Shown here piece by piece: positions 18,392-26,200 of a stretch of 64,000 bases of DNA (position 1 is the first letter of the stretch; every line of letters starts with the position of its first letter). The notes under the pieces are model-generated. The model searched no databases. It had not been told where the DNA came from and worked only from the letters and a program-made list of their open reading frames with translations. The translations under genes and the position numbers were made by a program. Location: assembly GCA_002269645.1 (NCBI GenBank), contig NIVC01000637.1, forward strand, positions 1 to 64,000, given 5' to 3'. This DNA comes from Macrostomum lignano (lineage: Eukaryota).

Positions 18392-20107
18392 TCACGAGTT
18401 CGAATCCGACTCGGCCTCGTCGTTGCCAGCCCGCAGGAGCTTCTTGCGCACCCGGCGCCGGATGTCTGCCTTCTCGGCGTCGTCCACTTCAACGGCGCCC
18501 AGCTCCAGCAGCACCCGGCGGGCCAGCGCGGTCAGTGCGTCGCCGCCGATTGAGGAGTCGGCGTCCCGGACTCGAGCCCGCTGGCCGGCCGACAGCAGCG
18601 GCTCCCGAGCCAGCAGGCGGCGGGCCTGGCCGAAGAACAGCCGCTCGGCCGCTGCGTACAGGCGGGCGTCGGCGGGGTTGGCGAGCTCCGCCAGTCGCCT
18701 CTGCTGGAGGTCGCCGGCGTCGGCGACGAGGCTGAAGTTGCCGCTGGCGCGCCAATTAGAGGCGACGGTGGCGTCCTGCTGCCAGAACAGGCGGCTGAAG
18801 CTCAGGCCGAGGCGCCTGCTCAGCAGGTATTGCGTCAGGATCTGCGCGGGTCCGAGAGTGGTGCTTGGTGGAGTGACATCCGCGTGACAACAGCAAATCC
18901 GCTTGAAGAGTCTTTACAGCTCCCTCAGTATCCCAAATCCTCAACTCCATCAGATATCCCAGATCCTCAACACCATCAGATATCCCAGATCCTCAACACC
19001 ATCAGATATCCCAGATCCTCAACTCCATCAGATATCCCAGATCCTCAACACCATCAGATATCCCAGATCCTCAACACCATCAGATATCCCAGATCCTCAA
19101 CTCCATCAGATATCCCAGATCCTCAACACCACCAGATATCCCAGATCCTCAACACCACCAGATATCCCAGATCCTCAACTCCATCAGATATCCCAGATCC
19201 TCAACACCATCAGATATCCCAGATACTCAACTCCATAAAAGTCCCAGCTTCCCAGCAGCTCGCTCACCTGCCACTCTGTCAGGCCGAACGCCGCCATCCC
19301 TACCAGATTGTGAAGCGCACTGGCCAGCAGTAGGTCCGCGGTTCGATTCCCGTTGGCGAAGACGGCCTGGCAGGGCAGGCCGCTGGCGTTGGCCAGCATG
19401 CGCGCCTGCCGGTTCAGCGCCGGGTTGGCGCGGCAGGCGGCGAACTCGGCCAGGGAGACGCCGCGCCAGGCGCCGTCGCCAGTCCGGCAGGGCGGAGGCC
19501 GGCGGCCGCGGCAGGTGGGCTGCGATTTCCGCCAGGTGGCGCCGCGGCGCGCGTGCTGCCACTCGGACAGGAAGCGGTCGGCCGGCCGGCGCAGCATAGT
19601 GACGTAGCGGAGGCGGCGCGGCCTCTCAAAGTCGGAGTCGAGCGCGGCCAGCTGGCCGGGCACGCAGGCAGACAGCGCGGCGAAGTCGGCGTGGAGGCCG
19701 CAGAGCCAGCCGGTGCTGTAGCGGCTCACCAGCCACAGGTCGCCGCGGCTGTTGCGGCAGCTGCAGCGCCATTTCCGCCGGCGCGCACCGCCGAGGCCGC
19801 CGCGGCCGCACTGGCAGCGCATGTCGGGTCGGCGCAAGCCGGAGACGAGCTGGCGGTTGAGGTGCGAGCCGCCGGTCTTCTGCATGTGCAGCAGCACGAT
19901 GACATCGCGGCGAGAGTCGAACAGGTCAACGGATTCGATGGTGCTGGCGGATTCCAGCTGGAAGGACGGCGGCAGCGGCCTGCTGAGCGAGGCGCTGGCC
20001 AGCAGCAGGAGCGCCAGCAGGGCGGTGACGGCAGCGGCCACAATGGCTGCCTGCCGCCTGCGACGCCGCCAGAGATGGCGCACTAAGCCAGTGCACCACA
20101 GGCGGTG
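18392..20107 (-). CDS. HS6ST: Heparan sulfate 6-O-sulfotransferase (type II Golgi membrane protein); start codon not encoded in the exon
   Basis: Exons 20107-19268 (donor GTGAGC) and 18841-18392 (TGA). Basic N-terminal tail plus hydrophobic anchor. Motifs LLHMQKTGGS (5'-PAPS site), CGLHADFAALSACVP, YVTMLRRPADRFLSEWQHARRGATW (3'-PAPS site) and C-terminal TQYLLSRRLGLSF...NPADARLYAAA match the HS6ST family pattern. Confidence 0.92.
18925..19235. repeat. 26-bp minisatellite in HS6ST intron (CAGATATCCCAGATCCTCAACACCAT)
   Basis: Direct tandem copies within intron 18842-19267. Confidence 0.9.
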
Positions 20108-22319
20108 CTGCGGGCGCGATAGTCACAAATGACTATATTAGTTAATAACTTTGTCTTTAGTTAAAACAAATAGACAAATCTCATATTTAACCCATGGGCA
20201 AATGGGCCTAGTTACCAACTGCATATGTACAACTAGACTAATTTCTCTAAATTATTGTCAGGTTAAATAACATAATCCCTTATACTTTTATAGATCTGCT
20301 TAGAATTGAAAAGTGGCTTTGGCAGCCTACTACTATTATTAAATTTGGCTAAAGAATATAAAGAAACCAGTTTTATCATGGCAATATATCAATATAATAT
20401 CTAAATAAACATATATTATAATGATTTGCACAAACTTTGTTAGATAAATCTAAATTAACCTACATGTAGATCTACATAGCCATGATGTAAATCTATTTGA
20501 TCATTTCTAGTTCAAATGACAAAATACAATCTTTCAATCTTTCAAAATCTTCCAAAGTGTGACTTATATACACTAAAATTGCTACTAATATACAGTGTTA
20601 TCTAGTACTTACCTATCTTTTACTTTTATCCATTATCCATTATCTACTACCTATCCTTTCTAATTTTAAGGAACCACCAATTAAAGAGTGATTAAATGTC
20701 TTTGTACAAAAAAAACAAAAAATGTGTTGGTCTATAGATAAACATGCTGTTATTCCTCAAATAAAGATGCAACATAATATTTTTATTATTGCATCCAAAA
20801 TTTGAGTGAATAAACAAAACCTTTTACAAAACAAGGATTAGCAATATATCAATCAGGACACTACACTTGCAATTTGCAAAAAAATGGAAGGTCAATTTTC
20901 AAATGTTGATTCTGACTCTTCAGAAGTATGTATAGAAATAATTCTTAACCAATATTATATTGTACTTTTATAGTAGTGTAAATATAATTTTGTACTATTG
21001 GTCACTCATTTAAAATCAATGATAATTTTTAGCAGCTTTAGAAATACTAGTTAATTAAGAAAATAGATACCAAGACAACAAATGGCTGCAATTTGATAGA
21101 TAGACCAATATATAAGACTTTATTAAGAATGCATTCTAAAACAAAAGTGAGGGGGATAAAAATGAAAATAAGGGATAATTTGTTAACAGTCATACCCATT
21201 TCTTTTCAGTCTTTCATTTATTTGCTATATCCCCCTCACTTTCATTTTACAATGTATTCTTAACAAATTCTCTATTGAGGGCATCGTAGGCCTATAATGA
21301 AAGTGAATATAAGGATTGTGCACTAATAAGCTAAAATTGTAAGATTCTTCATGGCTATATCCAATTCTTAATATTCTCCCTTATTTTTGCTTCTATACCT
21401 CCTCACTTTCATTTTACAATGCATTCTTAACAAATTCTCCATTAAGGGCATTGTATAATGAAAGTGAATATAAGGATTGTGTGCTAGCAAGCTATGATTG
21501 AAACATTTTTGCAATCAAAGCTACATCTATTTCAATTCTCACTAATTTCCAATGGGTATTATATAACAAAATTGACACAAAGTGCAAGTATTGTAAAACA
21601 AAAAAATGCCATATAATGCTTTAAACATGCTTTAATTAAAAGAACTAGAAAAAATTGACACTTTTTTAAGAATAACATTTTCTGTATACTAAAAATGGTC
21701 TGTTGGTAGGTATCTATCTATCTAGGTAAGTATGTGATCAGTTTTAGCAAAAATGGCTAAGCCAATTTTCTTTGAACATGCACTGTTCAATCAGAAATTT
21801 TTCCATGACAGTACTTGCAATGTTGCTAAGAAATTGCTTGATGCTAAAGGGATTAAATATTTGAAAAACATGCTTTTTGCAAAGGTCAAGCAGCTCTTTC
21901 AACTTTAAATGCATCATAAGAATGCTAAGAAAAAACTGACTGGTTGAATTCTGATTCTGAAATAGATTGCATCACAATAGGCTTTTTATTTATTGTCTGT
22001 ATACTAGTTGAATTGCATTAGTGTTGAGTGTAGAAGCATAGCACAGTACTTGATTTATATTGCCTAACCATATTGTTAGTATAGACACTGATACTGACTG
22101 CCTAAGAAATTAATTATATCATAACTGCTTCATGTGACTTTTACTCTACCTGACTTTGTGTGAGTGTTGATTTATATGAGCTACAAATTCATTTAACTTC
22201 AATGAGAGCTAGCCTAGAGCTGAACATACTGGACTACTAATGCAGCGACCTAGGTTCAAATCTTAGTAGTGTATATAAAGTATATAAAAGTAGTGAAATT
22301 TTCTTTTCATTCACTTAAT

Positions 22320-25666: not shown

Positions 25667-26200
25667 GGGCTGATAATAGCCAGGCTGTGGAGCCTTTTTG
25701 GTACCCAAGAGCACAAAGTACTGCTGGTCGGGCTGGACAATGCCGGCAAGACCACCGTGCTGTACCAGCTGGTGCTGGGCGAGGCCGTGCACACCTCGCC
25801 TACCATCGGCTCCAACGTGGAGCAGCTGCGCTGGCGCAACATCCACTTCGTGATGTGGGACCTGGGCGGCCAGACCTCCATCCGGGCCACGTGGGAGACC
25901 TACTACCAGAGCACCGACTTCATCATCCTCGTCATCGACTCCTCCGACAGGCAGCGGCTGGCCGTCATCAAGGACGAGCTGTACAAGATGCTCGCCTCGG
26001 ACCACCTGAAGCGGGCGCGGCTGCTCGTGCTCGCCAACAAGCAGGACATCAACGGCCGGCTGTCCGCGGCCGAGATCAGCCAGGCGCTGGACCTCACCAG
26101 CATCCGGGCCAACCCCTGGCATATTCAGGCCTGCTGCGCCCTGAGTGGCGAGGGCCTCACTGCCGGCCTGGAGTGGCTAGCCGCACAGGCCAAGGGATGA
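25667..26200 (+). CDS. ARL5: ADP-ribosylation factor-like small GTPase, ARL5 type; no ATG, begins after acceptor CAG at 25664-25666
   Basis: [13 protein letters not shown]-terminal helix, [10 protein letters not shown]-loop, [10 protein letters not shown] switch I, WDLGGQ, NKQD, and [14 protein letters not shown] closely follow the ARL5 pattern. No internal introns. Confidence 0.93.

What the first reader, a model, noticed from the sequence alone, without database searches (positions are those of the whole stretch)
20084..25700. Divergent HS6ST/ARL5 pair whose start codons may both come from an AUG-terminated spliced leader
Seen: ARL5 has an in-frame TAA at 25640-25642 and no ATG before Met in FVMWDLGG, which lies after the P-loop. 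Its frame opens at TTGCAG|GGG CTG ATA (25667), and adding one AUG gives M-G-L-I-I-A-R-L-W, the expected myristoylated ARL5 N-terminus. HS6ST (minus) has an in-frame TGA at 20125-20123 and no ATG before LLHMQK, inside the PAPS motif. Its frame opens at CCCGCAG|CAC CGC (20107), and adding AUG gives MHRLWCTGLVRHLWRRRRR plus a TM anchor. Both junctions are phase 0. Established: flatworm spliced leaders end in AUG, which has been shown in schistosomes to serve as an initiator Met. Inference: two head-to-head genes sharing an AT-rich promoter/outron region both depend on the leader for translation initiation, which would tie ARL5 myristoylation and Golgi anchoring of HS6ST to trans-splicing.
Basis: partly seen in the sequence, partly recalled or inferred. 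Interest (0 to 1): 0.85.

Follow-up and report, generated by a model that had tools for sequence, protein, structure and literature searches.

The report
Start codons donated by spliced leader
Two neighbouring genes of the flatworm Macrostomum lignano (the small GTPase ARL5 and a heparan-sulfate 6-O-sulfotransferase) have no ATG of their own and almost certainly get it from the AUG that ends the flatworm spliced leader, a real but already well-documented flatworm mechanism.

Summary
The window is Macrostomum lignano contig NIVC01000637.1 (assembly Mlig_3_7). The species' single 35-nt spliced leader (SL) ends in ...TTGCATG. ARL5 (+) opens at TTGCAG|GGG (25666/25667) on the invariant Gly2, with one residue (Met1) missing. 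HS6ST (-) opens at CCCGCAG|CAC (20108/20107). In both, an in-frame stop lies upstream with no ATG between. The next in-frame ATGs are codon 64 and codon 76, inside the catalytic cores. The deposited gene models are "partial" and start exactly at these two acceptors. A public RNA-seq contig from a related flatworm reads CAATTTATTGCATG|CACCGCCTG..., the SL tail joined in frame at the orthologous HS6ST acceptor. A second, old ARL5 paralogue has the same AG|Gly2 junction. Fasciola and Taenia ARL5, and a second M. lignano HS6ST, carry genomic ATGs. No upstream ATG|GT site matches the species' donor consensus. The SL-AUG reading is therefore well supported: directly for HS6ST, indirectly for ARL5. 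The mechanism has been known since 2006 in schistosomes and tapeworms and is noted in passing for Macrostomum, so these are new examples, not a new phenomenon. A shared promoter is untested, and the adjacency may be coincidence.

The parts
25660..25666 (+). ARL5-a trans-splice acceptor CTTGCAG|. It matches the M. lignano trans-acceptor motif [T/C]TNCAG.
   Evidence: Sequence; motif from PMC8629364; the deposited CDS starts at the next base.
25640..25642 (+). In-frame TAA closing the ARL5 frame upstream of the acceptor. There is no ATG between it and 25667.
25667..26200 (+). ARL5-a coding exon, codon 2 (Gly) to the stop, intronless, 177 aa. Met1 is missing from the genome.
   Evidence: Pfam Arf 1.3e-64. 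Best named hits are ARL5A/B. The alignment starts at the invariant Gly2. All 4 differences between copies are synonymous.
20108..20114 (-). HS6ST-a trans-splice acceptor CCCGCAG| (CCTGCAG| in copy L002).
   Evidence: The Logan transcript L006 switches from genomic sequence to SL sequence exactly here.
20123..20125 (-). In-frame TGA upstream of the HS6ST acceptor. It is TGG in the other two copies, where a TAA five codons further up closes the frame.
19268..20107 (-). HS6ST-a exon 1, codons 2-281. It encodes an Arg-rich cytoplasmic tail, the TM anchor (residues 21-39), the QKTGG sulfate-donor-binding motif and most of the catalytic domain.
   Evidence: The model reproduces the deposited protein P0121/PAA79381.1 exactly. 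HS6ST homologues score E 1e-46 to 1e-43.
18842..19267 (-). HS6ST-a intron 1 (GTGAGC...GCGCAG). It contains a 26-bp x 12 minisatellite at 18925-19236.
18392..18841 (-). HS6ST-a exon 2, including the stop codon.
20115..25659 (.). AT-rich spacer (about 31% G+C overall) between the two acceptors. It presumably holds both outrons and the promoter(s). It contains minisatellites, a MITE-like inverted repeat and no ORF of 80 aa or more outside the repeats.
   Evidence: No transcription start site could be mapped here.

Best explanation
ARL5-a and HS6ST-a of Macrostomum lignano are outron-bearing genes. Each one's first coding exon begins immediately after a 3' splice acceptor, at codon 2. The pre-mRNAs are SL trans-spliced at 25666/25667 (+) and 20108/20107 (-). 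The 35-nt spliced leader CGGTCTCTTACTGCGAAGACTCAATTTATTGCATG is joined so that its terminal AUG becomes codon 1. It is then the first AUG on the mRNA and is in frame.

The predicted products are M-GLIIARLW... (a standard Arf-family MG N-terminus) and M-HRLWCTGLVRHLWRRRRRQ followed by a signal-anchor (a standard type II Golgi sulfotransferase topology).

Shown here:
- the gene anatomy;
- the AUG-ended SL of this species;
- model 5' ends lying at the acceptors;
- the SL-exon junction in a congener's HS6ST transcript.

Inferred:
- SL addition to ARL5 in M. lignano;
- actual initiation at the SL AUG;
- myristoylation and Golgi anchoring.
For: 1. Species and SL. The window is identical to GCA_002269645.1 NIVC01000637.1. 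PMC8629364 gives the single 35-nt SL ending ATG and the trans-acceptor motif [T/C]TNCAG. ARL5-a TTGCAG, ARL5-b TTTCAG and HS6ST copy 2 CTGCAG all fit that motif.

2. Deposited gene models. The CDSs are 'partial' and start at 25667 and 20107. The same holds, or shifts by one codon, in all 2 called ARL5-a, 3 ARL5-b and 3 HS6ST-a copies. The annotation pipeline TBONE sets 5' ends at peaks of SL-containing reads (PMC5730564). A third 5'-partial model in the window does not start at an AG, so landing on an acceptor is not automatic.

3. Direct transcript evidence for HS6ST. Logan RNA-seq contig SRR28338166_20342 (L006) encodes an HS6ST orthologue that is 76% identical. It begins CAATTTATTGCATG|CACCGCCTGCGG.... 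The first 14 nt equal the SL 3' end. The switch from SL to gene sequence is exactly at the orthologous acceptor, and the ATG is in frame.

4. Coding constraint downstream of the SL AUG. Across the first 22 codons after the junction there are 12 identical codons, 5 synonymous changes, 4 non-synonymous changes and one in-frame codon indel. Two of the non-synonymous changes fall in the 19-codon Arg-rich tail. The other two lie just after it, at the start of the hydrophobic segment.

5. ARL5. Only Met1 is missing relative to orthologues. The paralogue ARL5-b is 70% identical in protein and only 36% identical at third codon positions, yet has the same AG|GGT junction with an upstream in-frame TAA. 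The arrangement is therefore old and maintained.

6. The genes are functional. ARL5-a copies differ at 4 sites, all synonymous.

7. Scanning logic. After the SL AUG, the next AUGs are out of frame (ARL5 nt 74, HS6ST nt 203). The next in-frame AUGs would delete the P-loop, or the TM anchor plus the sulfate-donor loop.

8. No cis alternative. ATG|GT occurs 3 times on the + strand and 6 times on the - strand of the spacer, against about 5.5 expected per strand. None matches GT[G/A]AG. The only strong + strand donors (21726, 22160, 24085) do not end in ATG. For the 24085 donor, which was checked, there is no in-frame Met upstream.

9. Precedent. The flatworm SL AUG is an in vivo initiator (Cheng et al. 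2006, as reported in PMC9851317, PMC3510090 and PMC12582326).
Against: - No M. lignano read or cDNA spanning SL|25667 or SL|20107 could be inspected with these tools. For ARL5 the SL junction rests on the position of the annotation boundary, the acceptor motif and paralogue conservation.
- The HS6ST acceptor in this copy (CCCGCAG) departs from the [T/C]TNCAG motif at one position.
- The L006 species is unidentified. It also has an internal in-frame ATG 21 codons downstream of the SL junction (codon 23 counting the SL Met as 1), so in that species the SL AUG is not strictly required.
- There is no protein-level evidence for initiation at the SL AUG or for myristoylation.
- A consensus donor (AAG|GTAAGT, exon end 24084) lies 1.6 kb upstream of the ARL5 acceptor on the same strand. 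It could give a cis-spliced, non-productive isoform if transcription starts upstream of it.
Confidence: 0.86

Rival explanations
1. A genomic 5' exon ending in ATG is cis-spliced to each acceptor. The start codon would then be genomic, and trans-splicing would be irrelevant.
For: The spacer holds ATG|GT sites at 21695, 22852 and 23360 on the + strand and at six positions on the - strand. Parasitic flatworms often share acceptors between cis- and trans-splicing (PMC12582326).
Against: - The ATG|GT counts (3 and 6) are at the level expected from base composition, about 5.5 per strand. None matches the M. lignano donor consensus GT[G/A]AG.
- The deposited transcript models stop at the acceptors instead of extending to an upstream exon.
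- The congener's HS6ST transcript carries the SL, not a genomic exon, at this junction.
- None of the strong + strand donors ends in ATG. The one at 24085, which was checked, also has no in-frame Met upstream.
Confidence: 0.05
2. Translation starts at an internal AUG or at a near-cognate codon (for example CTG at HS6ST codon 4), or the copies are decaying pseudogenes or assembly artefacts. The missing ATG would then have nothing to do with the SL.
For: GenBank and UniProt entries for these genes are 'partial' or have wrong-frame N-termini. M. lignano is a recent polyploid with many redundant copies.
Against: - Three independently assembled copies keep both ORFs intact. ARL5 differences are 4 of 4 synonymous.
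- Internal AUG starts would remove the P-loop, or the TM anchor plus the sulfate-donor loop.
- The region between the junction and the TM segment evolves like coding sequence between species.
- The SL AUG would be the first AUG met by a scanning ribosome.
Confidence: 0.04
3. Sub-claim of the first reader: the two genes share one bidirectional promoter and are co-regulated, so that their joint dependence on the SL is functionally linked (both products act at the Golgi).
For: The head-to-head arrangement, with no other gene called between the two, is present in all three genomic copies. Both products are Golgi-associated in other animals (my own knowledge of the ARL5 and HS6ST families).
Against: - The three copies are about 98.6% identical recent duplicates, so they count as one observation.
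- The acceptors are 5.56 kb apart, far wider than classical bidirectional promoters.
- The ARL5-b locus has no called gene in the 6 kb upstream of its acceptor. The HS6ST-b locus has none in the 4 kb upstream of its ATG. The pairing is therefore not conserved among paralogues.
- With 30-39% of genes trans-spliced, neighbouring SL-dependent genes are expected by chance.
Confidence: 0.2

Closest known systems
Flatworm SL 3'-terminal AUG used as initiator methionine (Cheng, Cohen, Ndegwa & Davis 2006, Schistosoma; extended to Echinococcus granulosus in PMC3510090)
   Same: - The SL ends in AUG.
- The acceptor lies directly before codon 2 of a conserved ORF.
- The SL AUG is in frame and is needed to reproduce the orthologous N-terminus.
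- No nearby alternative AUG exists.
   Different: These are different genes, in a free-living, early-branching flatworm (Macrostomorpha) rather than Neodermata. No translation assay has been done here. For ARL5 the dependence is shared by two old paralogues, while the Fasciola and Taenia orthologues keep a genomic ATG.
slORFs: ORFs created by SL-supplied start codons (slORFfinder, PMC9851317)
   Same: The concept is the same: the start codon is supplied in trans by the leader.
   Different: slORFfinder mostly reports new or alternative ORFs and near-cognate starts in nematodes, Oikopleura and trypanosomes. Here the canonical, conserved protein itself depends on the SL AUG.
M. lignano SL trans-spliced genes as annotated in Mlig_3_7 / Mlig_RNA_3_7 (PMC5730564, PMC8629364)
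   Same: Same species, same SL, same acceptor motif. The deposited models already end at these acceptors.
   Different: Those papers do not analyse use of the SL AUG. [quoted passage not shown]

Membership tests
SL-AUG-initiated trans-spliced mRNA (Cheng et al. 2006 class) | The organism has a spliced leader whose last three bases are AUG. | tested here: met
   The window is M. lignano Mlig_3_7. The SL is CGGTCTCTTACTGCGAAGACTCAATTTATTGCATG (PMC8629364). The SL RNA gene itself is not in the window.
SL-AUG-initiated trans-spliced mRNA (Cheng et al. 2006 class) | A 3' splice acceptor lies directly 5' of the first coding exon, with the frame closed upstream and no genomic ATG. | tested here: met
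   The same holds in copies L002 and L007 and in paralogue L003.
SL-AUG-initiated trans-spliced mRNA (Cheng et al. 2006 class) | Transcripts carry the SL joined at that acceptor (HS6ST). | tested here: met
   Logan contig L006 from a related species reads SL tail|CACCGC at the orthologous site. In M. lignano itself the evidence is only indirect: the gene-model 5' end lies at the acceptor.
SL-AUG-initiated trans-spliced mRNA (Cheng et al. 2006 class) | Transcripts carry the SL joined at that acceptor (ARL5). | tested here: inconclusive
   There is only indirect support. The deposited CDS starts at 25667, the acceptor fits the trans motif, and the paralogue has the same junction. No ARL5 transcript with an SL was retrievable: exact look-ups of the two ARL5 proteins (a and b) with Met added found nothing in the collection.
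SL-AUG-initiated trans-spliced mRNA (Cheng et al. 2006 class) | The SL AUG is in frame and restores the orthologue-like N-terminus. | tested here: met
   ARL5 lacks only Met1 before the invariant Gly2. HS6ST gains a basic tail plus TM anchor in frame, and this region is conserved as coding sequence between species.
SL-AUG-initiated trans-spliced mRNA (Cheng et al. 2006 class) | Translation actually initiates at the SL AUG. | not testable with these tools
   This needs ribosome profiling, N-terminal proteomics or a reporter assay.
ARL5 (Arf-like GTPase 5) | An Arf-family GTPase domain, closest relatives named ARL5A/B, Gly2, and the P-loop GLDNAGKT. | tested here: met
   Pfam Arf 1.3e-64. The top named hits are ARL5A/B at 61-70% identity. 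See also the alignment.
Heparan-sulfate 6-O-sulfotransferase (HS6ST) | Homology to HS6ST1-3, the sulfate-donor-binding QKTGG loop, and an N-terminal signal-anchor. | tested here: met
   Named HS6ST hits score E 1e-46 to 1e-43 at 40-47% identity. Pfam Sulfotransfer_2 is only borderline (22.5 bits against a cut-off of 22). The TM segment is residues 21-39. Enzyme activity was not tested.
Bidirectional-promoter gene pair | Divergent transcription start sites close together (classically under 1 kb) and co-expression. | not testable with these tools
   Start sites are unknown. The acceptors are 5.56 kb apart. The pairing is seen only in near-identical duplicates.

The most novel reading that the evidence does not exclude
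Obligate dependence on the SL AUG may be an old, stably maintained state for conserved housekeeping genes in Macrostomorpha. For ARL5 it predates the a/b duplication, since third codon positions are saturated. For HS6ST it is shared between species. The neodermatan ARL5 orthologues examined do not share it. If so, SL-supplied initiation arose or was retained independently of the cases known from parasites. It could affect many M. lignano genes now deposited as 'partial'. It could also be dissected genetically in the only flatworm with stable transgenesis.
Probability: 0.45. Interest if true: 0.4.

Novelty: new member of a known kind. Interest (0 to 1): 0.25.

Why it matters
- Annotation. These genes, and all their copies, sit in GenBank as 'partial' and in UniProt with wrong-frame N-termini, because gene callers cannot see a start codon that is added in trans. 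Recognising SL-AUG initiation gives the correct full-length proteins: MGLIIARLW... (178 aa) and MHRLWCTG... (430 aa).
- Biology. Expression of a Golgi GTPase and of a heparan-sulfate-modifying enzyme would be strictly conditional on trans-splicing.
- Phylogenetic reach. It extends a mechanism documented in parasitic flatworms to a free-living, early-branching, genetically tractable species.
- It does not reveal a new mechanism.

Tried and rejected
- SL RNA gene in the window: no match to the SL 3' 16-mer with up to 2 mismatches. Rfam found nothing in the 64 kb.
- Comparison of the duplicate loci L001, L002 and L007 to find conserved promoter or leader-exon blocks: the copies are about 98.6% identical throughout, so this is uninformative.
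- Exact look-up of the two ARL5 proteins (a and b) with Met added, hoping for transcript-derived entries: not in the collection. No Macrostomum ARL5 transcript appeared among the 120 best hits listed.
- Cis-donor search: ATG|GT sites are at chance frequency with non-consensus donors. The strong donor at 24084|24085 cannot supply an in-frame Met.
- Idea that the genes are retrocopies of SL-bearing mRNAs in which TTGCATG lost a T to become the acceptor TTGCAG: ARL5-a upstream matches the SL at 13 of 31 positions (p about 0.035 against all CAG sites in the window). ARL5-b and HS6ST are at background. This is not significant, so it was dropped.
- Treating 'partial' status in GenBank as proof of trans-splicing: rejected, because the third window gene (34157-35173) is also 5'-partial but does not begin at an AG.
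- The bacterial-type promoter scan was not used, because it does not apply to a metazoan.
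Full report
**Identity of the window.** The ARL5 translation recovered an identical 177-aa protein. Its encoding contigs are NIVC01000637.1 and NIVC01000636.1 of GCA_002269645.1, the Macrostomum lignano Mlig_3_7 assembly. 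Locus L001 is an exact substring of the window starting at 15667, so window position 1 equals contig position 1. The organism is therefore a free-living flatworm. M. lignano has a single 35-nt SL, CGGTCTCTTACTGCGAAGACTCAATTTATTGCATG, and its trans-splice acceptors are enriched for [T/C]TNCAG (PMC8629364).

**The observation.**
- ARL5 (+ strand): TAA at 25640-25642, then eight sense codons without ATG, then cTTGCAG|GGG CTG ATA at 25666/25667. An uninterrupted 177-codon frame follows to the stop at 26198-26200.
- HS6ST (- strand): TGA at 20125-20123, then five sense codons, then CCCGCAG|CAC CGC at 20108/20107.
- I rebuilt the HS6ST model as exon 1 19268-20107, intron 18842-19267 (GTGAGC...GCGCAG) and exon 2 18392-18841. 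It reproduces the deposited 429-aa protein exactly.
- Counting a leader-supplied Met as codon 1, the in-frame ATGs are codons 64 and 109 in ARL5, and codons 76, 97 and later in HS6ST.
- The first genomic ATG on each mature mRNA is out of frame: nt 74 in ARL5 and nt 203 in HS6ST.
- ARL5 is a clear Arf-family protein (Pfam Arf, 1.3e-64). Its best named relatives are ARL5A/B.
- In a nine-sequence ARL5 alignment, the M. lignano exon starts on the invariant Gly2 and lacks exactly one residue, Met1.
- HS6ST has named HS6ST relatives at E 1e-46 to 1e-43. With a leader Met it starts with an Arg-rich tail followed by a strongly hydrophobic segment, residues 21-39. This is the expected type II topology.

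**Evidence that the acceptors are SL trans-splice sites.**

1. Gene-model boundaries.
   - The deposited gene models are '5'-partial' and start exactly at 25667 and at 20107.
   - The same is true, or shifted by one codon, for every copy in the assembly: two called ARL5-a, three ARL5-b and three HS6ST-a.
   - The annotation was built by cutting transcripts at peaks of SL-containing RNA-seq reads (TBONE) and then calling ORFs (PMC5730564). An ORF that runs to the first base after an AG is what that pipeline yields for an SL-AUG gene.
   - 'Partial' alone is not proof. The next gene in the window (34157-35173) is also 5'-partial but does not begin at an AG, and it has a plausible genomic ATG at 34265. 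That the two genes of interest both begin at consensus-like acceptors is therefore informative.
2. Direct transcript evidence for HS6ST.
   - The HS6ST search returned a 455-aa protein that is 76% identical, from a Logan assembly of RNA-seq run SRR28338166.
   - Its 1550-nt contig begins CAATTTATTGCATG|CACCGCCTGCGGTGC.... The first 14 bases are the 3' end of the M. lignano SL.
   - In an alignment with the three genomic copies, similarity to the genome begins exactly at the base after the AG. The ATG is in frame and gives MHRLRCVGLVRHLWRRRRQ....
   - Over the first 22 codons after the junction the two species have 12 identical codons, 5 synonymous changes, 4 non-synonymous changes and one in-frame codon indel. 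Two of the non-synonymous changes lie in the 19-codon tail. The other two lie in the two codons just after it, at the start of the hydrophobic segment. This pattern fits translated sequence, and no AUG other than the leader's lies upstream.
   - That species has an extra in-frame ATG just before the TM segment. M. lignano has ATT GTG there, so M. lignano has no fallback.
3. The ARL5 paralogue.
   - ARL5-b (L003, contig NIVC01000051.1) is 70% identical in protein, 65.5% in CDS nucleotides and only 36% at third codon positions. It has the same structure...ATAATTTTCAG|GGT GTA GCC, with an in-frame TAA eight codons upstream and no ATG.
   - The junction therefore predates an old duplication and has been kept.
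   - By contrast, Fasciola hepatica and Taenia crassiceps ARL5 have genomic ATG GGC. The M. lignano HS6ST-b paralogue has its own ATG.

**The genes are live.** The three ARL5-a copies differ at four sites, all third-position synonymous. The flanking DNA differs by about 1.3%.

**The cis-exon rival.**
- The 5,559-bp spacer has 31% G+C. It contains ATG|GT three times on the ARL5 strand (21695, 22852, 23360) and six times on the HS6ST strand. About 5.5 per strand are expected from base composition.
- None of these matches the species' donor consensus GT[G/A]AG.
- The strong + strand donors (21726, 22160, 24085) do not end in ATG. For the one at 24085, the in-frame sequence upstream has a stop and no Met.
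- Together with the transcript evidence, this leaves the rival at about 5%.

**What remains inferred.**
- I could not inspect M. lignano reads, so the SL junction on ARL5 is indirect.
- Initiation at the SL AUG, Gly2 myristoylation and Golgi anchoring follow from established knowledge: scanning initiation, Arf-family N-myristoylation and type II sulfotransferase topology. They also follow from the schistosome demonstration (Cheng et al. 2006, as summarised in PMC9851317, PMC3510090 and PMC12582326). None of this comes from data on these genes.
- The 'shared promoter' idea is untested. The head-to-head arrangement is present in three loci, but these are near-identical recent duplicates. The acceptors are 5.56 kb apart.
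- The paralogues are not paired. No gene is called in the 6 kb upstream of ARL5-b or in the 4 kb upstream of HS6ST-b.
- With 30-39% of M. lignano genes trans-spliced, two adjacent SL-dependent genes need no special explanation.

**Comparison with what is known.**
- Every reported flatworm SL ends in AUG.
- In E. granulosus, several conserved proteins need it, and its use is conserved across Neodermata.
- A full-text search found no paper that analyses SL-AUG usage in Macrostomum gene by gene.
- The finding is thus a correct and well-resolved instance of a known mechanism in a new lineage and for two new genes. It has practical value for annotation but limited surprise.

**Verdict.**
- Observation: confirmed.
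- Interpretation: supported. The confidence that both genes use the SL AUG is 0.86. It is higher for HS6ST than for ARL5.
- Novelty: new member of a known kind.
- Interest: 0.25.

Noticed in passing
window 24078-24370 (+); L003 4688-5105 (+): A discrete element of about 290 bp lies 1.3-1.6 kb upstream of the ARL5-a acceptor. It is 77-79% identical (E 2e-55) to a sequence 0.9-1.3 kb upstream of the ARL5-b acceptor, in the same orientation, although the two CDSs are only 36% identical at third positions. It starts at a consensus splice donor (AGCCAAG|GTAAGTTGC). It then has a purine-rich tract and a 21-bp minisatellite (AACTAAGTTGCAATTAGGAGG), and ends ...TTTTGAGGTTGGGCATGTATG. It is either a dispersed repeat or a conserved regulatory or leader module. 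Its genomic copy number could not be checked.
   Followed up: partly
window 25667-26197 vs L003 6001-6531: The two ARL5 paralogues differ strongly in composition: GC3 is 0.90 in ARL5-a and 0.46 in ARL5-b. ARL5-a and HS6ST-a are islands of about 65% G+C flanking a spacer that is mostly 20-36% G+C.
   Followed up: partly
window 25667-26200; L003 6001-6534; L004 6001-15536; L005 6001-9347: Both M. lignano ARL5 coding regions are intronless. The Fasciola and Taenia orthologues span 9.5 kb and 3.3 kb with introns. A retrocopy origin from an SL-bearing mRNA was considered but is not supported.
   Followed up: partly
window 34157-35173 (+): A third gene is deposited as a 5'-partial 338-aa protein that does not begin at an AG. 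The likely true start is the ATG at 34265, followed by a signal-peptide-like LLLLLLLSAF. It has no Pfam match and lies in the window's most G+C-rich kilobase (72% G+C for 34001-35000).
   Followed up: partly
proteins P0123 and P0124 (UniProt A0A1I8I7P.., A0A1I8I9G..), same DNA as window about 19268-20107 (-): The UniProt/WormBase models of this HS6ST have N-termini translated in the wrong frame (PPVVHWLSAPSLAA... is frame +2 of exon 1). This is evidently because no genomic ATG is available.
   Followed up: yes
L007 3904-4434 (-), contig NIVC01001494.1: The third genomic copy of the locus contains an intact ARL5-a ORF, 100% identical in protein, that is not among the called genes there.
   Followed up: yes
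window 13042-18320, 26927-27365, 27931-28764, 29568-32344, 45284-47906: Very large minisatellite arrays occupy much of the window and create long spurious ORFs in several frames. The array at 45-48 kb has extreme strand asymmetry (GC skew -0.99, AT skew -0.90 for 46001-47000).
   Followed up: no
window 22884-23235: MITE-like structure in the spacer: 52-nt terminal inverted repeats, 96% complementary, 248 nt apart. Next to it is a 24-bp x 13 minisatellite at 22312-22638.
   Followed up: no
window 8435-9776 (+); 49956-50612 (+): Neighbouring coding exons: CUB and EGF/cEGF domains (E about 1e-13) at 8.4-9.8 kb, and an ammonium-transporter (Amt/Rh) exon (E 1.7e-32) at about 50 kb.
   Followed up: no
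L006 (Logan SRR28338166_20342): The species behind this RNA-seq run was not identified. It carries the same SL 3' end as M. lignano and an HS6ST that is 76% identical, so it is presumably another Macrostomum.
   Followed up: no
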